64,000 nucleotides of DNA from Hamiltosporidium tvaerminnensis FI-OER-3-3 (Eukaryota; Fungi; Microsporidia): assembly GCA_022605425.2 (NCBI GenBank), contig CM061251.1:186001-250000 (forward strand), in the 5' to 3' direction. Under the pieces are notes generated by a model, which was given only the letters and a program-made list of their open reading frames with translations, did no database searches and had not been told where the DNA came from. Position 1 is the first letter of the stretch. The number at the start of each line of letters is the position of its first letter. The position numbers and the translations under genes were made by a program. Below, one piece after another: positions 9,957-43,604 of the stretch.

Positions 9957-11573
9957 TTAAATTTCTATTTGCTTCATGGCTTTTCTAAATTGCTTTCTAT
10001 TTTTTTCACCTATATTTTCAAAAGAAAGTTTTACATCATCCATCCATACATATCTATTATATTGTTCAATTTTATCAAAAACCGATGTAATATCATGTTT
10101 GTCTAAACTCTCTGTTAATATTTTCAATTTAACATTTATTAACTCTGATTTTGCGGTTTGAGAGCTTATATATTCGAAAGCCTTCAATTTTATCAAATTT
10201 TTAGACTTTTCTTCAATATCATTGAGAATCAAAGGAAAGTTTAAAGTGGTTTTGTTTTTATACTCATTAAAAACAAGATTTAAATAACCAATTATATCAA
10301 AAAGCGATGTTTCAAAATTATTATTTTTTACTAATGAATCCCCAATATAGAGAAATAATAATATTGAATAGTAAAAATTATAATATGTAAATAATTTATA
10401 TTCTTCTGATATGGGATTTGGACTTAATTTATTTTTATTTTCATCAAAAAAATTAATATTATCCATGAATTCGGCAATCATTTTAAAGGTTTCGGGTTTA
10501 ACTTTATCTGAAATGTTATTTAGAGAGCAAAATATTTCCCTTATTAAATAATTTAAAATTAATAATCGTTCAAAATAAAAGTTGGAATATAAAATATCTT
10601 TGGTATCCCTTGAATCAATTTGTAATTTTCTGTATGTATCTTCAGCAATAATTATAAGCAAAAATGTAGGCAATGCAGAGTACAAATTCAGATGGTTATA
10701 GGAATTTTCAGAGTTAAATATAAAATTTAAGGCTGTCTGAAACTGAGGGAAAAAATGAAATACTTTATCTTGAAAATCATTCAAAAATAATTCAATCAAA
10801 TACTCTCCAACAATAATATTTATTTGTGATAAATTGGTTTCACAGTCACTCAAATACTCAAAATTAAATCTAACAAATAGAGCGATATTTGCCTTTAGGT
10901 GTACTATAAAACCGTAAACCTTTTCTTCTGCCGCCTGAGCTACGATTATTTCTTTAAAACTCATTAAGGATTCGTCATTATCAATCTTGAATAGCTCTTT
11001 GGATAGTGTTTGCAGCCAAAAAAATATTATTTTTAAATTTAGATTTTTAAACGTCTTGTCAGTTGAAAATTTTTCTAAACAATTCATCCTGCTATCTAAT
11101 TCAAAAATTATCTTTTTCTCCAGAATTTCAGATATTTTTGATAAAAAATATTCGTGTTTTTTATCATCATCATCAGATTTATATATTCTTTCTAATTCAT
11201 CTTCATTGGAGGAAATATCATCAATGTTCCCTACAGATCCGGTTTTGTCGTGTTTAAATGCTAGATTTTTTTTTGTTGTAATTTCAGCTCTATTAACTGA
11301 AAATGAACAGCTAGAAACTTTTGATGTACATTTACTACCACTTTTTACCTTTTTTTTGTGCTGTAACAAAATTTTAGATACTCTTTCACAAACATTCAAA
11401 TTTCCTTTATTATTTCTTCTGTTTTTTTCGATTTTTTTAAATCTAGAAATATTTGAATCCCGGATTCTGATTCTACCAACATTTTTATGCTCGAAAATCA
11501 TTTTTTTTCTTCTTAAATGAGTATTAGAAACTTCTAGGAAGAATAATATCACAATTATTAGTGATAGACACAT
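9957..11573 (-). CDS. Secreted lineage-specific family protein, paralog A (538 aa)
   Basis: Start moved from 11627 to the ATG at 11573, which follows a CCC motif (ACACCCACGATG) and opens a hydrophobic signal peptide MCLSLIIVILFFLEVSNT. Shares HEYFLSKISEIL, FPQF, YFERLLI.NY and LFTYYNF with the ORFs at 23146 and 39017. Confidence 0.85.
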   Translation of the reverse strand: MCLSLIIVILFFLEVSNTHLRRKKMIFEHKNVGRIRIRDSNISRFKKIEKNRRNNKGNLNVCERVSKILLQHKKKVKSGSKCTSKVSSCSFSVNRAEITTKKNLAFKHDKTGSVGNIDDISSNEDELERIYKSDDDDKKHEYFLSKISEILEKKIIFELDSRMNCLEKFSTDKTFKNLNLKIIFFWLQTLSKELFKIDNDESLMSFKEIIVAQAAEEKVYGFIVHLKANIALFVRFNFEYLSDCETNLSQINIIVGEYLIELFLNDFQDKVFHFFPQFQTALNFIFNSENSYNHLNLYSALPTFLLIIIAEDTYRKLQIDSRDTKDILYSNFYFERLLILNYLIREIFCSLNNISDKVKPETFKMIAEFMDNINFFDENKNKLSPNPISEEYKLFTYYNFYYSILLFLYIGDSLVKNNNFETSLFDIIGYLNLVFNEYKNKTTLNFPLILNDIEEKSKNLIKLKAFEYISSQTAKSELINVKLKILTESLDKHDITSVFDKIEQYNRYVWMDDVKLSFENIGEKNRKQFRKAMKQIEI

Positions 11574-13042
11574 CGTGGGTGTTAATTTTAATGTTATGAA
11601 ATAACAATTATTTATAGTTTTTTTCATTTTCTAAAAATAGAATATTTTTTGATCCATTTGATTGGTTTTATTTCTTTAGAGAAAAACGAAGAATTATATT
11701 TTCTCCTTAAATTATGTCTTTTAAATTAAATATTTTGTCATTCTTTTAGTTGTAATTTGTTTTAGAATTAACGGTTTTACGTATTTACAATAATTTACAC
11801 TATAGCCACGGTTTATTTTCGACTACCTGTTAAGTTCGTTTTTCAGAGATTAATTTTATATTCAACAAAGAAATAAAAATTGAATAAATTTCTTTTGGTA
11901 AACATCATTGGTTTAGCTATAAAACTTTGCTACATTAGTCTGGATTTTATAAACTGTCATGCTTTGTTTACTTGTATATTTTTAGTCTTTTATATCCGCA
12001 TTTTGGCCGTCTCTAAGCAATTTTATAGTAAATTTACAAAACATATTTTAGTTATTAAATTTTCAATATCTGTATTAAGAAGTTTTAAATTTATAGTAGT
12101 TGTAACGGATTATTTTGTTTGCTCAATCAAGCTCACCATCTATATTCATAACTTCGCTTGGTTTTGTATCCATTTATTTGAGTGAAGAATTTTCTATGTC
12201 TGAAAAAACTGTTCTTTTTAACGATATATTGTATTGGTTATTCATTGTATAAATTCTTAGTCATTTTTATTAAAACTTTTTTAATTTAATCAAGTATAAA
12301 GTTCCACAAACTATTCAAGCAATAATTGTTTTATACAGTTATCATTGAGAATATAAATAAATTGCACGGAAGAATGATAGAAAGGCTTAAATCTTATCAT
12401 AAAATTTTATATTAAACTGTAGATTCTTAAAAAAAAAACAGAACAAATTCATTTAAATTTTTTTCAAGAATGGAAACTTTAGAAAAATGAAAAAAAAAAC
12501 ATTATGTTATTCTTGATAAATAGTACAATGCAGAAGCACATTCACGAATTTTATTGCAAATGTTTTTTTGAACCAACAGAATCTTTTTAATAATTTTCTA
12601 TTCAGTTCGACTCACTATTATTGTTATAAGTTTTAAAAACAGATAGAAGAGGCCTATTTTAATTCGAGCACTCATATTGGTGTCTTGTAGTATTTTAACC
12701 AATTAAAGATTTCGAGTCTTTGCCGTTGTCGTCGGGACATTGCTGAATTATATAAATGAATGATGATATGATGGGTTTGTTCATATAAAAATTTTGACCC
12801 CAAGAATTATTTGCTCGATAATATTTCTCTTTGCGATTTTGGATGGATTAATATGCTCTTGATGTAGTTGTTTTCACGATATACACTTATTGATTAAAGT
12901 AAATAAAAATATTAAAAATTCAATTTAATTATAAAGTAACAGTTGAAACTCATTAAATAATAGAATTATAATACTTTTTTATTTAAATCCAAAATATTAT
13001 AAATATTTTCATATTTAAAACTTTAGTGTCGCATTTAAATAT

Positions 13043-15485: not shown

Positions 15486-18400
15486 TTATTTAATAAAATT
15501 CTGGGTTAAAATATTTTTAACATTTTTATATGTTTTCTTCTACCTCTTTAACCACATTTGTCTCTTCTTCCAAATCCGGCTCTTCATTTATGTTATTGGT
15601 CGGTTCCTCTAAAGTGGTTCCTCCTTGTAAAATAAAGGGGGCTTTATATTTTGGTTTAAAATTTTTGGCACCATCTTCCTCTGTTTTCGCTTCTTTTAAA
15701 GGGGGTATTGGTTCCTCATGCATCTCTGATCTCATAATAATACCCATTGACGCTCTCTCCCAGCTCTCTTCGGCATTTAGTCCTGACTCAAGTCCTCTTC
15801 GTCGATCAAAGGAAATAGTTTCGACTGTCTTTTTAAGTACTATAGACTGAATGTATGCTTCTACATTCATGGATATTTCTAGTCTTTTAAGATGAGATTT
15901 ATGGTATTTTGTCACAATACCGTCCCAGGTCATCACATAAGGGATTATCTCAACACTACACCTATAAATAAGACCCAACTCATTGGCTAGCAGGTCATAC
16001 TTCCTAAGTTTTTCAGTTTCAACTATTTGAAGTGAATCTTGGGAAGTGATTCCTACTTCAATGAGTGTTATCTTATTCTTCTTCTTATCTAAAATAAATA
16101 TGTCCGGTCTGTTATTCCGAATTTTAACATCAGTTTTAATTCTGGTGTCCACTCTTATCTCTGCATACTCATTATCAAGAATTTCTTGAACTGAGTGGCT
16201 CCTTATTCGTTTTGAAGACTTAAACTTATATCTATTTAGAAGGAGAAGGTGTAGGCATCTAACCACTTCATTATGCCGTCTAGTGTAATCATGGCCTAGC
16301 ATTTTTTCACATCTAGTTGCTAGATGATCCACAGTCTTACCAGACTTCCCGCAATGTTGACACACACCATCTGCACCCCAGAATACATTTCTATCCTGGA
16401 TATAGCAGAACACAGCTTCATTTCGTGGCCTAATATTTCCTCTCTTTAGCCATCTTGAAGAGTCACTAACACTCACAAGCTCATTTTTCCTTGCATTATA
16501 TAACTTTGAATGGAGTTTTCGTTTTTCTATTTCGTTATATAGTTTTGCAAGTTGAGCTTCTTCTAAACTTTTCTTAGTGACTTCTTCTACCAACCTGTAC
16601 TTTACTTTTAAGAAGCCTTTTATTAGTGCAAGATGGGTTTTATTATTATTCTCCACCTTGAGGATTGCTGCTCGTCTAGTTGATATTTCTTTACTTTTTT
16701 CCAGACAATCCAAGAGTTGCAGAAGCATATGTTCGCTTCGCAACTCAACACTATGTAGACCTCTTCCAAGTTCTGTTCTAGGAAGATACAACCGCTCTTT
16801 ACATCCTGGGCGGAGATGTATCTTATTTTTAACCAACACCGCACGCACTGCCTCATCTAACTTAGAGAAGTCAGCCGGTTCAAGTCGAAGTACTCCTATG
16901 TGGTAGTTGATTAACGATATCGCATGTTGATTGATTGCAGAAAATAAATTTTTTGCGTTTAATCTAGTGTGACAAAGTCTTTCAACTCTTGATATAAGTT
17001 TGCTCTGTACTTCTTCAAATGAGCTACGTGTTAGGATTCCTCTGCTATCTTCTATTATTCCTAAATATTTGTAAACACTAACACCTTCTAGAAGAGTAGC
17101 AGTATCTTCACAACACGTATCATTTGTGGCTGACTTCTCTTTGTTAATCTCTAAGCCAATCACCTCTAAAAATTCCTTTGCCTCGCCTGTCATAGCACTC
17201 AATGTGGAGCTGTCTTTTGCAAGGAGCTTAAGATCATCAATAAACAAGAGATGATTAGTAGAATGGGATTCTGCATCTGTTTGTACTGTCACTTTTGTGT
17301 ATTTTTCATTAAGCTTTCGGCTTAATGGATCCATACACAACACAAATAACAAAGGTGACAGACTATCTCCTTGTAGAATTCCTCTATCAATCTTCTTGCT
17401 CATGATTTTTTCAGGCCCTACTGATATATCAATTTTCCATTTTGATATAATTACCTTAATAAATTTCAGGATCCAATCAGGTAAATTAAGGTTTTCAATG
17501 CATTGAGTTAAATAAGCATGATCTATTGACTCATAAGCTTTTTTTACATCAATCCATGTTGCCTTAAGATTATTTCCATACTCTTTATTTAAGGCAATAT
17601 TCAGTAGAGCCTGCTCTTTCGCTCCCTGCACACCTCTTACCGCCCCTAGTTGGTTCTCTGCAAGCAACCCTCGCCTTTCCACTTCGAGTTGAACGACTTT
17701 CGTTACACACTTTGTCGTTAACTTATAGAGGTTGGACATACAAGTGATTGGCCTGTAGTCAGAGCCTCTTCGTGGAATTCCTTTCGGTATCAAATACGTA
17801 AGCCCGCAGTAAAACCAATCAGCTTGAGGTGTTCCTTCTAAACATATAACTTTCACAATATCATAAAGATATTTGTGAAGAGTTGTAAGTTTCTTAATGA
17901 AAAAATTGTAAATACCATCAATTCCAGCAGCTTTCCAATTAGGGAGCCAATTAATGATATTCACAAATTCATCAAGTGAAGGAAACGTGGTCGGATGATT
18001 ATCTGATACAAATGGAATCAAATAATCATCGTACGTGACTGTGTCATCATTTTTGTTCCACATTGTAGACCAAAAACTCACAATTTCATCACGGCTAACC
18101 ACATGCTCGGATTCCACACGCTCGGATAACCCACGATAAAATCGACCTCGGAAAAGCTCAAACATACGATTCTCTTTTCGGAATTGCTTCCTACTTTCAT
18201 GCATCGTAATTTTTTTCTCGTAAACATTCAAAGACTCATTCTTCTTAACTAAAGCCTCAGAAAGATCAGTTACGCTGCTCAAGTTTAAATTAAACTCTCG
18301 CATGATTTTCTTAAGGCTCTTCGTTTCCGAAGTGGAGAGCTTTTCCTGCTTACGAGCTTTCTCGAGGAGATCTTTGGAAAGTACTAACTTAGAAATTTTA

Positions 18401-19298
18401 CTTTCTATGTTTTCCTTCCAAGCGGATCTAGGCTTCTCTTTACGTGTTGCCTCGTCATAGCATACCTGCGCAGCTTGCATGATATACGCGGCTTCCGTAA
18501 TTGACTCAGGTACATGAGCTCCTGCATATTCACCGACTATTCGATTTATGAGATCCAGAACTTTACTATCAACCAATTCATTTGGATGTTTTCTAGTTCG
18601 GACCACCACTTTTCCAATTTCGTTCTCAGAGATTTCTTTGATTTTACTCAAGAATTTATCTCTCAGGTTTATGTACTCCGTGGTGTCGGTCAAGGTGCAT
18701 GTATCAGCGAGACAAGTGGCGATTCTACGTCGCTCTCCATTCTCTTCTGATTTTACATCCTTTCCCATCTCACTTTGTGCCAATTTTTTTAACACTTCGA
18801 GAGTTTCAGTGCAGCCAAATTTCTCATTATAGTACCTGTGAAGCTCTGTCCAGCCATTTCTTGGCATTCTTTCAAACCTTGTCTGTACTGCAAAAAAAAC
18901 AATTCGAGGCCATTCCTTCGGGTCGGCTGTTACGGAATCGAATATCGTCCGCAATGCCATTAGCCTGTTACCTTCCGGAATAGCTAGAGTACAGGGGCTT
19001 GTCATGTCGTACGATGGCTCGCACGCAGAGACTTCAACCGAAGAGGGAACTGGTGCATTAGGCGAAGGTAAGGTGTCAAGCCCACTATTTTGCATTTTAC
19101 TGCATGTTTGGCTTGGTGGTGGAGGTGTTATTGTTGTGTAGGAGGAGGAAGGTAGGGGAATCGCCGGTGGGTGTAGCTTACATTTTTGTATCTCACTATC
19201 ACTCTTTTTCACCTCATCAGCGTCGTTTGCAGCCTTTATTTTGGTATTATTCGATATTTCGCTGCTAACATTTTTCTTTCTACCCATGTTTTTTTTTT
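15486..19298 (-). mobile_element. Full-length R4/Dong-clade non-LTR retrotransposon with 13-bp target-site duplication
   Basis: Flanked by direct copies of TTGCAATCAATAT (15473-15485 and 19299-19311). Single long ORF, ~11-nt A-rich 5' leader, ~40-nt 3' UTR. Confidence 0.9.
15526..19287 (-). CDS. Reverse transcriptase / CCHC / restriction-like endonuclease polyprotein (1253 aa)
   Basis: RT motifs KAAGIDG, DYRPIT, WIDVKKAY, GILQGDSLSPLLF, FIDD and YKYLG. CQHC..DHLATRC zinc knuckle, RHN, and PD-(D/E)xK endonuclease RPDI...IEV...K..KY. Start set at MGRKK (19287) because the upstream 36 codons of the listed ORF are mostly Tc1 TIR sequence. Confidence 0.93.
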   Translation of the reverse strand: MGRKKNVSSEISNNTKIKAANDADEVKKSDSEIQKCKLHPPAIPLPSSSYTTITPPPPSQTCSKMQNSGLDTLPSPNAPVPSSVEVSACEPSYDMTSPCTLAIPEGNRLMALRTIFDSVTADPKEWPRIVFFAVQTRFERMPRNGWTELHRYYNEKFGCTETLEVLKKLAQSEMGKDVKSEENGERRRIATCLADTCTLTDTTEYINLRDKFLSKIKEISENEIGKVVVRTRKHPNELVDSKVLDLINRIVGEYAGAHVPESITEAAYIMQAAQVCYDEATRKEKPRSAWKENIESKISKLVLSKDLLEKARKQEKLSTSETKSLKKIMREFNLNLSSVTDLSEALVKKNESLNVYEKKITMHESRKQFRKENRMFELFRGRFYRGLSERVESEHVVSRDEIVSFWSTMWNKNDDTVTYDDYLIPFVSDNHPTTFPSLDEFVNIINWLPNWKAAGIDGIYNFFIKKLTTLHKYLYDIVKVICLEGTPQADWFYCGLTYLIPKGIPRRGSDYRPITCMSNLYKLTTKCVTKVVQLEVERRGLLAENQLGAVRGVQGAKEQALLNIALNKEYGNNLKATWIDVKKAYESIDHAYLTQCIENLNLPDWILKFIKVIISKWKIDISVGPEKIMSKKIDRGILQGDSLSPLLFVLCMDPLSRKLNEKYTKVTVQTDAESHSTNHLLFIDDLKLLAKDSSTLSAMTGEAKEFLEVIGLEINKEKSATNDTCCEDTATLLEGVSVYKYLGIIEDSRGILTRSSFEEVQSKLISRVERLCHTRLNAKNLFSAINQHAISLINYHIGVLRLEPADFSKLDEAVRAVLVKNKIHLRPGCKERLYLPRTELGRGLHSVELRSEHMLLQLLDCLEKSKEISTRRAAILKVENNNKTHLALIKGFLKVKYRLVEEVTKKSLEEAQLAKLYNEIEKRKLHSKLYNARKNELVSVSDSSRWLKRGNIRPRNEAVFCYIQDRNVFWGADGVCQHCGKSGKTVDHLATRCEKMLGHDYTRRHNEVVRCLHLLLLNRYKFKSSKRIRSHSVQEILDNEYAEIRVDTRIKTDVKIRNNRPDIFILDKKKNKITLIEVGITSQDSLQIVETEKLRKYDLLANELGLIYRCSVEIIPYVMTWDGIVTKYHKSHLKRLEISMNVEAYIQSIVLKKTVETISFDRRRGLESGLNAEESWERASMGIIMRSEMHEEPIPPLKEAKTEEDGAKNFKPKYKAPFILQGGTTLEEPTNNINEEPDLEEETNVVKEVEENI

Positions 19299-19415
19299 TT
19301 GCAATCAATATAATAATTATTTTTAAAAAATAAAAATTTAAAAAAAAATTAAAAAAATAGAAATTTATAAAATAAAAATTGAAAAAATAATTCATTCATT
19401 ATAAAATTAACTCCA

Positions 19416-23145: not shown

Positions 23146-24735
23146 TCATATATTTTTTAGCATCCTATTTGTACGATCAGTCTCTAGTTCAAAGTGGGAG
23201 GCAAATAATTCATTAAACCTGTTTATTCGATCAAGAACAGTGATTTCATCAGATGGATCAAAAAATTGACTTAAAAGGCTTAATGCATAAAATATCGGTT
23301 TTGATCCGAAATTCCCACGAGAGGTAATTTTAAAAGCATCTAATTTGATCAAATATACTGACTTTTCTTCAATATCATTGAGAATCATAGAATAGTTTAA
23401 AGTGTTTTTTTTTCTAATCACATTGAAAACATGATTTAAACGACCAATTATATTAAAAAGAGGCAATTCTAGAGCACTGTTTTTTGTTTCTTTGTTCTGA
23501 ATATATAGAAATAACATTGAATAGTAAAAATTATAATATGTAAATAATGTATATTCTTCTGATATGGGATTTGGTCTTAATTTATTTTTATTTTCATTAA
23601 AAAAATTAATATGCTCCATAAATTCGGCAATTCTTTTAAAGTTTTCAGGTTTAACTTTATACGAAATGTTATTTAGAGAGCAAAATATTTCTCTTATTAA
23701 ATAATTTAAAATTAATAATCGTTCAAAATAAAAGTTGGAATATAAAATATCTTTGGTATCTTTTGAAATAATTTGTAATTCTTTGTATGTATTTTCAGCA
23801 ATAATCATAAGCAAAAATGTAGGCAACATTGAGTCCAAATTCAGAAGGTTAGATGAATTTTTAGAGTTAAATATAAAATTCATGACTATTGCAAATTGAG
23901 GAAAAAAATGATATATTTTATCATTAAAATATTTAAGAAATATTTCAATCAAATACATTGCTGTAACTATATTTATCTCGGCCAATGGCATTTCGGATTC
24001 TATCTCATTGTAAGAATCAAATTTCGAAACCCGAGAAAGTTTTTCCTTTAAAAAAGTTAGACAGCTGTATAAAGTTTTTTCGGCAGACATAGACATTATC
24101 ATTGCTTCGAATTTTATTAAAGACGTATTTTTTGCAACTAAGGCTGGCCTTTTTGATAGTGTTACGAGCCAAAAAACTATAGTTTTTAAATTTTGATTTT
24201 TTAAATCTCCGTTTGTTAAAAACTCTTCTGAGCAGTGCATCATACTATCTAATTCAAAAATTTTATTTTTCTCGAGAATTTCCGATATTTTTGATAGAAA
24301 ATATTCATGTTGTTTATCATCATTAAAGCCAAATTTTCTTTCATTTTTATTAGAGAAAGGACCATCAATTTTTCCAACAGAGTAAGATCTTACATCTTTA
24401 ATTTTGGAATATTTTTCTGTTCGAATTCTAGCTTTTTTAATTGAAAATGAACTGTCGAAAGTTTGTCTTGTAGAATGTTTATAACTAACTGGCCTCTCTC
24501 TTTTGTGAATTGGCCATTTTATTCGTGTTCTTTTACGCACGATAACATTGCTTGCATTTATATATCCGTTAGCTTCATTATTTACCTTATTTTTTTTGTT
24601 GTTTTTAATGTCTGGAATATTAAAATTCGAGATTTTACTAACATTTTCATAATCAACAACCTTTTTTATTGTACGAACAGGAATGTTGGAACTCTGTGAA
24701 ATAGTTAGTAATGTAATTGCTAAAAATAGTTGCAT
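23146..24735 (-). CDS. Secreted lineage-specific family protein, paralog B (529 aa)
   Basis: Signal-peptide-like MQLFLAITLLTISQSS, CCCC motif upstream (CACCCCATAATG), and the same conserved blocks as paralogs A and C. Confidence 0.88.
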   Translation of the reverse strand: MQLFLAITLLTISQSSNIPVRTIKKVVDYENVSKISNFNIPDIKNNKKNKVNNEANGYINASNVIVRKRTRIKWPIHKRERPVSYKHSTRQTFDSSFSIKKARIRTEKYSKIKDVRSYSVGKIDGPFSNKNERKFGFNDDKQHEYFLSKISEILEKNKIFELDSMMHCSEEFLTNGDLKNQNLKTIVFWLVTLSKRPALVAKNTSLIKFEAMIMSMSAEKTLYSCLTFLKEKLSRVSKFDSYNEIESEMPLAEINIVTAMYLIEIFLKYFNDKIYHFFPQFAIVMNFIFNSKNSSNLLNLDSMLPTFLLMIIAENTYKELQIISKDTKDILYSNFYFERLLILNYLIREIFCSLNNISYKVKPENFKRIAEFMEHINFFNENKNKLRPNPISEEYTLFTYYNFYYSMLFLYIQNKETKNSALELPLFNIIGRLNHVFNVIRKKNTLNYSMILNDIEEKSVYLIKLDAFKITSRGNFGSKPIFYALSLLSQFFDPSDEITVLDRINRFNELFASHFELETDRTNRMLKNI

Positions 24736-39016: not shown

Positions 39017-40864
39017 TTAATTTTTTAATTTTCTTTTTAAATAAGAGGTATTTTTACGAATAGATTTGTTATACCGTGTTATTCTATTAAAAAACGACAT
39101 TTTATGGTTTTCTTCGAAAACTCGATTCAAAATTTTTAATTCAGTAGTTCTACTGCAAATATTTTTAAATGGATTCAATTTTAAGAATTTTCTCGACATT
39201 TCTTCAATCCTATTAAAGATTGTAGGATAGTCCAAAGTACAGTCGTTTCTATACATATAAAAAATAAGATTTAAATAATCAATTATATTAAAAAGCGACG
39301 TTTCAAAATCCTTGTTTTCTGATGATGCATTCTCAATGTAAAGAAATACTATAGAATATAAAAAATTATAGTAGGTAAATAATATATGCACATTTGACCT
39401 GGGATGTAATATTAGCATAGATTTATTTTCGTCAAAAAAATTAATATTATCCATAAATTCAGGAATCATTTCAAGGTTTTCTTGTTTAACTTGATCTGAA
39501 ATATTATCGAGCGAGCAAACTAGTTCCTGTATTGCATAATTAAAAATTAATAAACGTTCAAAATATTTATTAGTATATAAAATTTCAATGTTAGTCTTTT
39601 GCCCACCTTGTAATTCTTTGTATGAGTCTTCAACAATAAATATAAGCAAAAATGTAGGAAATATTGAGTTGAAATTCAGAAAATTATATGAATTTTTCGA
39701 TTCGAACATTAAATTTAAAACGGACTCAAACTGGGGAAACAAATGAAATATTTTCTTGCGAGAATTAATAGAAAATATTCGTCTTAAGAATTTTGAAACA
39801 ATTAGATTCATTTTTGATATATCAGATTTAAAGTCTTCAATATTGTATATATTTATTTCTACGAACAAAGAGATATGTTGCTTCAGATATATAAGAAAAT
39901 CCTTAACAATTTCCTCTGCATATATACCAAGGATTATTTCTTCGAAATTCATTAAAAGATTTTTTTTGTCAATCTTATTGAGCTCTTCCAATAGTTTTTG
40001 CAGCCAAAAGAATATTAAATTTAAATTATTATTTTCAAACGTCTTGTCTTTTAAAAATGCTTTTGAATTACATATACTTTTAGCCAAATTTAAATTTGGT
40101 TTTTTTTTTAGAATTTCAGATATTTTTGATAAAAAATATTCGTGTTTTTTATCATCATTAAAGTCATATATTCTTTCTATTTCTTCTTCATTAGAAGAAA
40201 GAAAGTCGTCGACTGTTTCAGTTTTATCATCATTAAAGTCATATATTCTTTCTATTTCTTCTTCATTAGAAGAAAGAAAGTCGTCGACTGTTTCAGTTTT
40301 ATCATCATTAAAGTCATATATTCTTTCTATTTCTTCTTCATTAGAAGAAAGATAGTCGTCGACTGTTTCAGTTTTATCATCATTAAAGTCATATATTCTT
40401 TCTATTTCTTCTTCATTAGAAGAAAGATAGTCGTCGACTGTTTCAGTTTTATCATCATTAAAGTCATATATTCTTTCTATTTCTTCTTCATTAGAAGAAA
40501 GATAGTCGTCGACTGTTTCAGTTTTATTATGTTTAAATTCCAAACATTTTTCCTTTTTAATTTGATACATTTTTTCCATATCCGAACTGCCAATATATTT
40601 TCCCTCTTTTTTATTTCGCCATACTAATACGTTATTTTTGCTCAATGAGAGAATAGAAGGTGTTTTATTGTCATCAACACCAGTATTTTTACTAAATCGA
40701 TTATTTTTTATATACGTTTCGAGTGGTTTAATTTCGTTAATATTATCTATATATGGTGTTTGTCGAATTCTTCTATATTCTAAGAATCTTTTTCTTCTGA
40801 TTACCGTAGTATTTGAACTCAATAGAAACAATGGTAAAACGATTGGTAAAAACAAATGCTTCAT
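39017..40864 (-). CDS. Secreted lineage-specific family protein, paralog C (615 aa), with five 25-aa acidic repeats
   Basis: Signal-peptide-like MKHLFLPIVLPLFLLSS, (KTETVDD[Y/F]LSSNEEEIERIYDFNDD)x5, and the family blocks HEYFLSKISEIL, FPQF, YFERLLI and LFTYYNF. Confidence 0.9.
   Translation of the reverse strand: MKHLFLPIVLPLFLLSSNTTVIRRKRFLEYRRIRQTPYIDNINEIKPLETYIKNNRFSKNTGVDDNKTPSILSLSKNNVLVWRNKKEGKYIGSSDMEKMYQIKKEKCLEFKHNKTETVDDYLSSNEEEIERIYDFNDDKTETVDDYLSSNEEEIERIYDFNDDKTETVDDYLSSNEEEIERIYDFNDDKTETVDDFLSSNEEEIERIYDFNDDKTETVDDFLSSNEEEIERIYDFNDDKKHEYFLSKISEILKKKPNLNLAKSICNSKAFLKDKTFENNNLNLIFFWLQKLLEELNKIDKKNLLMNFEEIILGIYAEEIVKDFLIYLKQHISLFVEINIYNIEDFKSDISKMNLIVSKFLRRIFSINSRKKIFHLFPQFESVLNLMFESKNSYNFLNFNSIFPTFLLIFIVEDSYKELQGGQKTNIEILYTNKYFERLLIFNYAIQELVCSLDNISDQVKQENLEMIPEFMDNINFFDENKSMLILHPRSNVHILFTYYNFLYSIVFLYIENASSENKDFETSLFNIIDYLNLIFYMYRNDCTLDYPTIFNRIEEMSRKFLKLNPFKNICSRTTELKILNRVFEENHKMSFFNRITRYNKSIRKNTSYLKRKLKN
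40148..40527. repeat. Coding minisatellite, 5 x 75 bp
   Basis: Five near-identical 75-bp units that differ at one base (Tyr vs Phe codon). Confidence 0.97.
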
Positions 40865-42800: not shown

Positions 42801-42954
42801 CACTTACACATACAATGAAATATGTGTTAAAAGAACGAAAAATATTGAACCAAAAAATTTCAATAAAAAAATAAAAATCTTGCATTTGACTCAAAATATA
42901 AAATTAGTTCAAATATAAAAAAGAACGAACAAATAAAACCGACAAAGGGGGTAA

Positions 42955-43165
42955 AATAAATCAAAAAAAACCAAGAGATTCTTTCTTTTGTGAAATTCAA
43001 TAAATAAGAAACTTAAATTTTTCTAAATTTAAATACAAAAATGTTTATAAATAAATCAAAAAAAAACCAAGAAATTCTTTCTTTGATGTAATTCAATAAA
43101 TAAGAAACTTAAATTTTTCTAAATTTAAATACAAAAATATTTATAAATAAATCAAAAAAAAATAC
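42955..43165. repeat. Tandem duplication (period ~96 bp) of the RPL32 3' flank
   Basis: ATTCAATAAATAAGAAACTTAAATTTTTCTAAATTTAAATACAAAAAT at 42995 and 43091. AAATAAATCAAAAAAAA occurs three times. Confidence 0.9.
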
Positions 43166-43178
43166 TAAATAAATTCTT

Positions 43179-43604
43179 TTATTCCTTTCCCTCACTGACC
43201 AATCTTGCATCCTTATTAAGTACCAATATATCCAATTCATTAGCACGACACACAATTTCAATACGTTTCTTTGCACCCACTTCATGTGCAATCTGTGCAC
43301 AATAAAACCTATTTAAAGAAGTAAGAGCTTCTAAATCTTTAATATTTGAAACAATTACTTTTTTATAACTATTTGGTAAAATATGTCTGATAATGTTGTC
43401 AGATTTATATCCCTTACTAGGCATACGTAAATAACCACGTAGTTTCTTACGTACTGGGTTATCTATACCTCTAGGTTTACGCCATGAAGAACTTATACGT
43501 TTGTGACGGTCAGATTGAAATCGTTTAAAGACATATTTTGTCTTTTTTTGTTTTGTAAATTCTACTAACGGTTTTGACACTAAAATTAGAAAATGTGACT
43601 TACT
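43179..43604 (-). CDS. RPL32: 60S ribosomal protein eL32; ATG split by a 24-nt intron (exon 1 coding base 43604, exon 2 43579-43179)
   Basis: FKRFQSDRHKRI, WRKPRGIDN and YCAQIAHEV motifs. The listed ORF starts at GTG. The minus strand reads ACCCATAAAAAA|GTAAGT...CTAATTTTAG|TGTCAAAA, and splicing gives A+TG. Confidence 0.95.
   Translation of the reverse strand, partial: SKSHFLILVSKPLVEFTKQKKTKYVFKRFQSDRHKRISSSWRKPRGIDNPVRKKLRGYLRMPSKGYKSDNIIRHILPNSYKKVIVSNIKDLEALTSLNRFYCAQIAHEVGAKKRIEIVCRANELDILVLNKDARLVSEGKE
43580..43603 (-). other. 24-nt spliceosomal intron within the RPL32 start codon
   Basis: GTAAGTCACATTTTCTAATTTTAG has a canonical 5' site GTAAGT, branch point CTAAT and 3' TAG. Removal restores ATG in frame. 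Confidence 0.9.

What the first reader, a model, noticed from the sequence alone, without database searches (positions are those of the whole stretch)
40148..40527. Secreted protein with five tandem EPIYA-like tyrosine motifs (EEEIERIYDF): candidate phosphotyrosine-mimic effector in a eukaryotic parasite
Seen: paralog C has a signal peptide, a basic cluster (RRKR) and five 25-aa acidic repeats, each containing E-R-I-Y-D. Three units also carry VDDYL. Paralog A has one equivalent unit (ELERIYK) and paralog B has lost the Tyr motif. Established: bacterial effectors CagA (EPIYA), Tir (EHIYD), Tarp (ENIYE) and AnkA (ESIYE) use E-x-I-Y-x motifs, often in variable-number tandem repeats, that host Src/Abl kinases phosphorylate to recruit SH2 proteins. 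Inference: this may be a convergent system in a microsporidian, with copy number tuning avidity. Units differ at only one base, so the expansion is recent.
Basis: partly seen in the sequence, partly recalled or inferred. Interest (0 to 1): 0.8.

Follow-up and report, generated by a model that had tools for sequence, protein, structure and literature searches.

The report
Variable acidic repeat in orphan secreted protein
A Daphnia-infecting microsporidian (Hamiltosporidium) gene for a probably secreted, genus-restricted, fast-evolving protein carries a real 25-residue acidic repeat whose copy number differs between isolates, but nothing beyond a short, chance-prone E-x-I-Y match supports a phosphotyrosine effector.

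Summary
A 615-aa minus-strand ORF (39017-40864) carries five 75-bp units. Three units are identical and two differ from them by one base (Tyr/Phe in VDD[Y/F]L). Every unit encodes EEEIERIYDF.

The genome matches the Hamiltosporidium tvaerminnensis long-read assembly. The gene belongs to a family found only in Hamiltosporidium:
- Five intact paralogs and one pseudogene, in two clusters.
- A signal-peptide-like N-terminus and a basic stretch.
- A variable region modelled at low confidence.
- A conserved ~380-aa all-helical domain with no sequence or fold match.

Orthologs in other isolates have 1, 2, 3 and at least 5 units, so the array is a coding VNTR. A second family member carries an unrelated 46-aa repeat that also varies in copy number. 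The helical domain evolves near neutrality (7 synonymous against 40 nonsynonymous segregating sites).

The phosphotyrosine reading is untested and weakly grounded:
- E-x-I-Y is expected 0.34 times per 1000 aa in this AT-rich proteome.
- The five copies are one duplicated occurrence.
- Paralog B lacks the Tyr.
- Each unit also holds three acidophilic Ser/Thr kinase consensus sites.

Best reading: a lineage-specific secreted or surface protein with a slippage-driven acidic spacer.

The parts
39017..40864 (-). Gene C: 615-aa ORF, a member of a Hamiltosporidium-restricted family. It is present in NCBI nr as a 615-aa protein on a 1,005,214-bp contig.
40811..40864 (-). Residues 1-18: signal-peptide-like segment (MKH, a 12-residue hydrophobic core, then SSN). 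The Ser-Asn pair after the hydrophobic run is invariant in all 7 aligned family members.
   Evidence: S17 and N18 invariant; Kyte-Doolittle 19-residue window 1.9 at residues 4-22. No SignalP was available.
40760..40798 (-). Residues 23-35: basic cluster RRKR...RRIR. Related basic runs occur in paralogs A and B. It could be a dibasic processing site, a heparin-binding-type motif or a nuclear localisation signal; none was tested.
   Evidence: residues 21-113 hold 22 basic against 11 acidic residues
40151..40525 (-). Five 75-bp (25-aa) acidic units, KTETVDD[Y/F]LSSNEEEIERIYDFNDD. The region holds 50 acidic and 10 basic residues in 125 aa. AF2 pLDDT is about 28-39.
39020..40150 (-). Residues 239-615: conserved all-helical C-terminal domain of the family, with no Pfam, PDB-fold or ESM Atlas match.
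9957..11627 (-). Paralog A, 556 aa, with a single unit-equivalent (ELERIYK at 11181-11198).
23146..24735 (-). Paralog B, 529 aa. The unit-equivalent reads NERKFGF (24325-24345), with no Tyr.

Best explanation
Gene C encodes a secretory-pathway protein of a small, clustered, fast-evolving family found only in Hamiltosporidium. Its architecture is a signal-peptide-like N-terminus, a basic stretch, a variable region that is probably disordered, and a conserved ~380-aa helical domain. The 75-bp array is a coding minisatellite. It arose by duplication of the acidic linker segment that sits just before the helical domain. That segment is single-copy in paralog A and in the H. magnivora CWI36 ortholog. 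The array expands and contracts by replication slippage or unequal recombination, giving 1 to at least 5 units among isolates. Its shown effect is to lengthen a strongly acidic spacer, with a net charge of about -8 per unit. By inference, the protein is host-exposed or sits on the parasite or spore surface, and the units at most multiply a short linear motif. That motif could be the Tyr or the acidophilic Ser/Thr sites, and which one matters, if either, is unknown.
For: The gene is real. It is a 615-codon ORF in ~25% GC DNA, where a stop codon is expected roughly every 11 codons by my own calculation. It has intact orthologs in four other isolates and paralogs at 41-51% identity. The family is restricted to the genus: the word search returned only Hamiltosporidium proteins, and the five hits of a profile search of 1.84 billion representatives were Hamiltosporidium-labelled, apart from one unnamed fragment of paralog B. 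The own genome holds 5 intact copies plus one pseudogene with 9 stops. Unit counts are 5 here, at least 5 in CWI37 (gene split across two contigs at the array), 2 in CWI38, 3 in CWI39 and 1 in CWI36. A second member (L014/P0011) has its own 138-bp x3.1 coding repeat, and the short-read isolate's protein P0009 is exactly one unit (46 aa) shorter. AF2 gives pLDDT below 50 for residues 1-321 and a helical C-terminal domain at 55-86. Evolution is near neutral. The C-domain has 7 synonymous against 40 nonsynonymous segregating sites, not different from the neutral expectation (p 0.33), and pairwise omega is 0.84-3.3. Paralog A has omega 0.73. Clade-specific, rapidly evolving families enriched in targeting signals are the known profile of microsporidian host-exposed proteins (PMC5423893).
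Against: Secretion is inferred only from inspecting the N-terminus. Counts from short-read assemblies may be collapsed. Omega near 1 fits relaxed constraint as well as host-driven diversification. Two internal hydrophobic segments score 1.5 on Kyte-Doolittle, so a membrane-associated topology is not excluded.
Confidence: 0.6

Rival explanations
1. Phosphotyrosine-mimic effector. The protein reaches the host cytoplasm. Host Src/Abl-type kinases phosphorylate the Tyr of each ERIYD unit, and the array recruits SH2 proteins with an avidity set by copy number.
For: ERIYD fits the loose E-x-I-Y-[ADE] pattern of EPIYA-related motifs such as Tir EHIYD and AnkA ESIYE (PMC3593179). Ile at -1 and acidic flanks suit Src/Abl preferences (established knowledge). 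The motif sits in variably duplicated units in a low-pLDDT region, as in CagA, Tarp and AnkA. ERIY is kept in all 21 units seen and in paralog A of both named species.
Against: E-x-I-Y is expected 0.34 times per 1000 aa here. I estimate about 80 chance E-x-I-Y-[ADEG] hits in a proteome of 3,573 proteins. The five copies are one duplicated event. Paralog B has Phe and Lys in place of Tyr and Ile. The other repeat-bearing family member uses an unrelated unit. Invariance of Tyr across 7 unit variant sites has about 0.75 probability by chance. No delivery or phosphorylation evidence exists. EPIYA-like repeats were predicted in eukaryotic parasites in 2010 (PMC2999339), and I know of no validation. 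The pY+1 to +3 residues (D-F-N) match no classic SH2 preference I know of, whether Grb2 pYxN, Crk pYxxP, p85 pYxxM or Nck pYDEV.
Confidence: 0.06
2. Structural extracellular protein of the parasite (spore wall, polar tube or sporophorous vesicle). The repeat is a length-polymorphic spacer, and the basic cluster acts as a heparin-binding-type adhesion motif.
For: Several microsporidian spore wall and polar tube proteins carry tandem repeats, and several spore wall proteins carry heparin-binding motifs (PMC7040029). Polar tube protein repeats vary enough to genotype Encephalitozoon hellem isolates (Xiao et al. 2001, cited in PMC5439460). Gene C has a signal-like N-terminus, an RRKR basic run and a VNTR.
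Against: There is no sequence similarity to any named spore wall or polar tube family. The helical domain evolves near neutrality, which is unusual for a structural component. There are no Cys-, Pro- or Gly/Ser-rich features typical of PTP1, PTP2 or SWP1.
Confidence: 0.22
3. The functional element of the unit is the acidic Ser/Thr cluster, not the Tyr. The LSSNEEE and TVDD stretches are acidophilic kinase (CK2-type S/T-x-x-D/E, Fam20C-type S-x-E) sites, or the array acts as a polyanionic cation- or protein-binding stretch.
For: Each unit holds three S/T-x-x-[DE] sites and one S-x-E site but only one invariant Tyr (sequence; consensus motifs from established knowledge). SSNE[ED]E is conserved between paralogs A and C. 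Net charge is about -8 per unit.
Against: This is consensus matching only, and such sites are also common by chance in acidic low-complexity sequence. Nothing was tested.
Confidence: 0.08
4. The five-unit array is an assembly or polishing artefact.
For: Near-identical 75-bp units are hard to resolve. The read-level check failed for technical reasons.
Against: The assembly used ONT reads with N50 32.68 kb plus PacBio and Illumina polishing (PMC10542269), and a 375-bp array is trivially spanned. Independent assemblies of four other isolates show arrays of 1 to at least 5 units with distinct unit variants. The frame is intact.
Confidence: 0.03

Closest known systems
Bacterial EPIYA-type effectors (CagA, Tarp, AnkA, Tir, BepD-F, LspA; PMC3593179)
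   Same: An E-x-I-Y-[D/E/A]-type pentapeptide sits in tandemly duplicated segments whose copy number differs between strains, in a region modelled as unstructured.
   Different: The organism is a eukaryotic parasite with no type III or IV secretion. Delivery, phosphorylation and SH2 binding are all untested. Arg at motif position 2 is not among the listed variants. There is no homology, since this is a functional class and not a family. The motif is chance-prone in an AT-rich proteome.
Microsporidian host-exposed, clade-specific, rapidly evolving protein families (Nematocida NemLGF-type; PMC5423893)
   Same: A targeting-signal-like N-terminus, restriction to one genus, clustered paralogs, near-neutral or diversifying evolution, and no recognisable domains.
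   Different: The family is small (5 intact genes plus 1 pseudogene) and not large. There is no sequence relationship to Nematocida families and no experimental evidence of host exposure.
Microsporidian polar tube and spore wall proteins with repeats (PTP1, SWP1, NbSWP16, EOB14572; PMC7040029)
   Same: A secreted protein with an in-frame tandem repeat whose number varies between isolates, and a basic motif that could be heparin-binding.
   Different: No sequence similarity. The repeat is acidic and Glu/Asp-rich, not Pro- or Gly/Ser-rich. A large helical domain is present. Localisation is unknown.
EPIYA-like repeats predicted in eukaryotic intracellular parasites (Plasmodium, Leishmania; PMC2999339)
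   Same: A computational prediction of repeated E-x-I-Y motifs in exported or hypothetical proteins of an AT-rich intracellular parasite.
   Different: Different phylum and unrelated proteins. To my knowledge those predictions also remain unvalidated, which shows how little the motif alone proves.

Membership tests
EPIYA-type tyrosine-phosphorylated effectors (functional class) | EPIYA or a related pentapeptide ([E/N/T]-x-[I/L/V]-Y-[A/E/D/G]) | tested here: met
   ERIYD occurs five times, the same pattern as Tir EHIYD. E-x-I-Y is expected 0.34 times per 1000 aa by composition.
EPIYA-type tyrosine-phosphorylated effectors (functional class) | Motif embedded in segments duplicated a variable number of times among strains | tested here: met
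   1, 2, 3, at least 5 and 5 units in five isolates. Counts from short-read assemblies may be underestimates.
EPIYA-type tyrosine-phosphorylated effectors (functional class) | Motif lies in an intrinsically disordered region | tested here: inconclusive
   AF2 pLDDT is 28-39 over the array, but DSSP on the model draws helices. The alignment was shallow and no disorder predictor was available.
EPIYA-type tyrosine-phosphorylated effectors (functional class) | Delivered into the host cell cytoplasm | not testable with these tools
   Only a signal-peptide-like N-terminus is seen.
EPIYA-type tyrosine-phosphorylated effectors (functional class) | Tyr phosphorylated by host Src/Abl kinases, then binds SH2 proteins | not testable with these tools
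   No phosphoproteomic or binding data were reachable. A paper search for microsporidia plus EPIYA gave one irrelevant paper.
Microsporidian host-exposed clade-specific families (PMC5423893) | No homologs outside the clade | tested here: met
   Named hits are Hamiltosporidium only, in the 5.8-billion-protein word search and the 1.84-billion-representative profile search.
Microsporidian host-exposed clade-specific families (PMC5423893) | Secretion signal or transmembrane targeting signal | tested here: inconclusive
   A hydrophobic N-terminal run followed by an invariant Ser-Asn in all members. SignalP and Phobius were not available.
Microsporidian host-exposed clade-specific families (PMC5423893) | Rapid sequence evolution | tested here: met
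   C-domain has 7 synonymous against 40 nonsynonymous segregating sites, with pairwise omega 0.84-3.3. Paralog A has omega 0.73. The only control is weak: RPL13 shows 0 nonsynonymous and 2 synonymous differences.
Microsporidian host-exposed clade-specific families (PMC5423893) | Large paralogous family | tested here: not met
   Only 5 intact genes plus 1 pseudogene in the 21.6-Mb genome.
Microsporidian polar tube / spore wall proteins | Sequence similarity to a characterised PTP or SWP family | tested here: not met
   No Pfam family above threshold. No named relatives.
Microsporidian polar tube / spore wall proteins | Localisation in the spore wall or polar tube | not testable with these tools
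   This needs spore proteomics or immunolocalisation.

The most novel reading that the evidence does not exclude
Gene C would be the first eukaryotic (microsporidian) EPIYA-type effector. It would be secreted into Daphnia cells and tyrosine-phosphorylated on each ERIYD unit by host Src/Abl kinases. The isolate-to-isolate variation from 1 to at least 5 units would tune SH2-protein recruitment, making it a polymorphic virulence locus in the Daphnia-Hamiltosporidium coevolution system.
Probability: 0.05. Interest if true: 0.85.

Novelty: new member of a known kind. Interest (0 to 1): 0.33.

Why it matters
Daphnia magna and Hamiltosporidium form a field model of host-parasite coevolution, yet no parasite interaction genes are characterised. 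This gene is genus-restricted, probably secreted and evolving near neutrality, and its coding repeat differs in length between isolates and between the two named species. That makes it a concrete candidate marker, and possibly an interaction locus, to follow in population samples. The phosphotyrosine idea would be a striking case of convergence with bacterial effectors if it were true. The present evidence only makes it testable, not likely.

Tried and rejected
2. Family and fold searches. Pfam gave only a sub-threshold PRiA4_ORF3 hit on the repeat (E 0.0093, 16.1 bits against a cutoff of 26.6), which I treat as noise. The ESM Atlas feature search scored at most 0.82. Foldseek against PDB gave nothing at E <= 0.001, and the Atlas shape search gave TM <= 0.21. 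All are uninformative.
3. Second AF2 model. A model of the C-domain alone with 12 sequences was no better (mean pLDDT 48.5).
4. Repeat-only word search. It found only the gene's own orthologs.
5. Kex2-processed repeat protein idea. Rejected, because there are no dibasic sites inside the units.
6. PEXEL-like export motif. RFLEY and RVLEY do not fit R-x-L-x-[EQD].
7. Anchors and retention signals. There is no hydrophobic C-terminus and no KDEL or HDEL, so no GPI anchor or ER retention signal is apparent.
8. Transmembrane reading of the C-domain. Kyte-Doolittle peaks are 1.2-1.9, contain charged residues and are inconsistent between paralogs. This stays unresolved.
9. Selection on the Tyr. There were 7 unit variant sites, all nonsynonymous and none at the Tyr. 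Both outcomes are non-significant (about 0.27 and 0.75 by chance), so there is no power.
10. RIY elsewhere in the family. R-I-Y or E-K-I-Y also occurs once in the N-terminal regions of the two distant paralogs (P0009, P0007), but not in aligned positions. I treat this as chance.

Full report
**What is there.** TRF reports one clean array at 40147-40527, with period 75, 5.1 copies, 99% matches and no indels. It lies inside a 615-aa minus-strand ORF at 39017-40864. I cut the coding strand into units. Units 1-3 are identical and units 4-5 are identical to each other. The two groups differ at a single base, which changes Tyr to Phe in VDD[Y/F]L. Every unit encodes EEEIERIYDF. The plus-strand ORFs over the array are by-products of the repeat. 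In DNA of about 25% GC, a stop codon is expected about every 11 codons by my own calculation, so a 615-codon frame is not chance. The only addition is that the gene is on the minus strand.

**Organism and gene status.** The closest proteins are all labelled Hamiltosporidium tvaerminnensis or H. magnivora. The genome has 21,638,905 bases in 17 contigs. That matches the published long-read assembly of H. tvaerminnensis (21.64 Mb, 17 contigs; ONT, PacBio CLR and Illumina; Iso-Seq-guided annotation; PMC10542269). A 615-aa protein on a 1,005,214-bp contig sits in the same 90% cluster in NCBI nr (P0019). The gene model is therefore already annotated, presumably as hypothetical.

**The family.**
- Paralogs A (9957-11627) and B (23146-24735) share 51% and 41% identity with C over the C-terminal ~400 residues.
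- A profile search of the own genome finds five intact members. Three are in this window on contig 6 and two are on contig 3. There is also a pseudogene with nine stops on contig 15.
- A profile search of 1.84 billion cluster representatives returns five proteins. Those with a source name are Hamiltosporidium, and the unnamed one is a fragment of paralog B.
- Pfam, the ESM Atlas, Foldseek against PDB and the Atlas shape search give nothing usable.
- The alignment shows the shared architecture: a short hydrophobic N-terminus followed by an invariant Ser-Asn, a basic stretch, a poorly conserved region, and then a conserved helical domain of about 380 residues.
- AF2 models residues 1-321 at pLDDT below 50, with about 28-39 over the array. 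It models the C-terminal part as helices at 55-86. A second model of the domain alone was no better.

**The array is a VNTR.**
- Orthologs carry 1 unit (H. magnivora CWI36), 2 (H. tvaerminnensis CWI38) and 3 (H. magnivora CWI39).
- Isolate CWI37 carries at least 5. There the gene is split over two contigs that both end inside the array.
- The order of the Tyr and Phe unit variants differs between isolates. A few other unit variants exist: I>M, I>K, D>N, T>I, T>S and E>G.
- These counts come from short-read assemblies and may be collapsed.
- The single-unit state matches paralog A, which has one ELERIYK or ELERIYY just before the domain. The array therefore arose by duplication of the acidic linker that abuts the helical domain.
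- The contig-3 member (L014/P0011) carries a different in-frame repeat in its N-terminal region: 138 bp, 3.1 copies, 94% matches.
- Its counterpart from a short-read isolate (P0009) is exactly 46 residues, one unit, shorter.
- Repeat gain with copy-number change is thus a recurrent property of this region of the family. It is not specific to the ERIY unit.

**Rate of evolution.**
- Nei-Gojobori comparisons of gene C among four isolates give omega of 0.12-0.48 for residues 1-113. For the helical domain they give 0.84-3.3.
- Counting segregating sites gives 7 synonymous against 40 nonsynonymous in the domain. This is indistinguishable from neutrality (p 0.33).
- The N-terminus shows 6 against 8. 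The contrast between the two regions is marginal (Fisher p 0.057).
- Paralog A against H. magnivora has omega 0.73 (14 synonymous, 45 nonsynonymous differences).
- The only control available, RPL13, shows 0 nonsynonymous and 2 synonymous differences, which is too few to mean much.
- Intact frames across isolates and paralogs argue for function. The near-neutral rate fits either host-driven diversification or weak constraint.

**The phosphotyrosine reading.**
- On pattern alone, ERIYD fits the loose set of EPIYA-related motifs listed in PMC3593179 (EHIYD, ESIYE, ENIYE and others). It also shares their context of variably duplicated segments.
- From the amino-acid composition of ORFs in this window, E-x-I-Y is expected 0.34 times per 1000 residues. 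One other ORF here has it.
- I estimate about 80 chance E-x-I-Y-[ADEG] matches in a 3,573-protein proteome.
- PMC2999339 found such motifs in 107,231 of 9.2 million proteins. AT-rich Plasmodium falciparum topped the protist list, with 47 proteins carrying two or more copies.
- That paper had already proposed such effectors in eukaryotic parasites. I know of no validation.
- Five copies here are one occurrence multiplied by duplication.
- Paralog B has Phe and Lys instead of Tyr and Ile.
- The Tyr is invariant in all 21 units seen. With only 7 variant sites, that has about 0.75 probability by chance.
- The residues after the Tyr (D-F-N) match no classic SH2 preference that I know of.
- Each unit also contains three S/T-x-x-[DE] sites and one S-x-E site. 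An acidophilic Ser/Thr kinase reading is at least as easy to construct.
- Delivery into the host, phosphorylation and SH2 binding cannot be tested with these tools.

**Alternative contexts.**
- Several microsporidian spore wall and polar tube proteins carry tandem repeats, and several spore wall proteins carry heparin-binding basic motifs (PMC7040029). Polar tube protein gene variation is used to genotype Encephalitozoon hellem isolates (PMC5439460). A structural extracellular role is therefore a serious rival.
- Clade-specific, rapidly evolving families enriched in targeting signals are what proximity labelling found as host-exposed proteins in Nematocida (PMC5423893). That profile fits this family apart from its small size.

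**Limits.**
- I therefore have no expression or read-level evidence.
- No signal-peptide or disorder predictor was available.
- Twenty public runs from seven studies hold most of the locus as contigs, but de Bruijn contigs cannot size a 75-bp-unit array.

**Verdict.** This is a real coding VNTR in an orphan, probably secreted, fast-evolving protein restricted to Hamiltosporidium. The phosphotyrosine-effector idea remains a low-probability hypothesis (about 5%) that is now cleanly testable.

Noticed in passing
window 10357-10656 (paralog A) against the matching part of paralog B: Paralogs A and B are 90-97% identical at DNA level over about 300 bp, inside genes that are otherwise 50-80% identical (76% overall).
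   Followed up: partly
L014:806-1234 (G000 contig 3, family member P0011): A distant family member has its own in-frame 138-bp x3.1 tandem repeat (46-aa unit, unrelated sequence). The short-read isolate's version (P0009) is exactly one unit shorter.
   Followed up: partly
L015 (G000:C15:214424-215185): A sixth family copy is a pseudogene with 9 in-frame stops (4 TGA, 1 TAG, 4 TAA).
   Followed up: no
L007 / L008 / L009 against window 39026-40864: The gene C ortholog labelled H. magnivora CWI39 is closer to the H. tvaerminnensis sequences (C-domain dS 0.010-0.017) than to H. magnivora CWI36 (0.040). It also shares unit variants (TEIV, K..N) with H. tvaerminnensis CWI37. Shared polymorphism, introgression or labelling could explain this.
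   Followed up: no
   Followed up: no
window 42954-43162: A 96-bp x2.2 AT-rich tandem repeat with 94% matches, just downstream of the RPL32-like ORF (43179-43580, minus).
   Followed up: no
window 15526-19395: A 1289-aa ORF with a reverse transcriptase domain (RVT_1, E 8e-27) lies between paralogs A and B, so the paralog cluster is interspersed with retroelements.
   Followed up: no
I worked beside it and did not examine it further.
   Followed up: no
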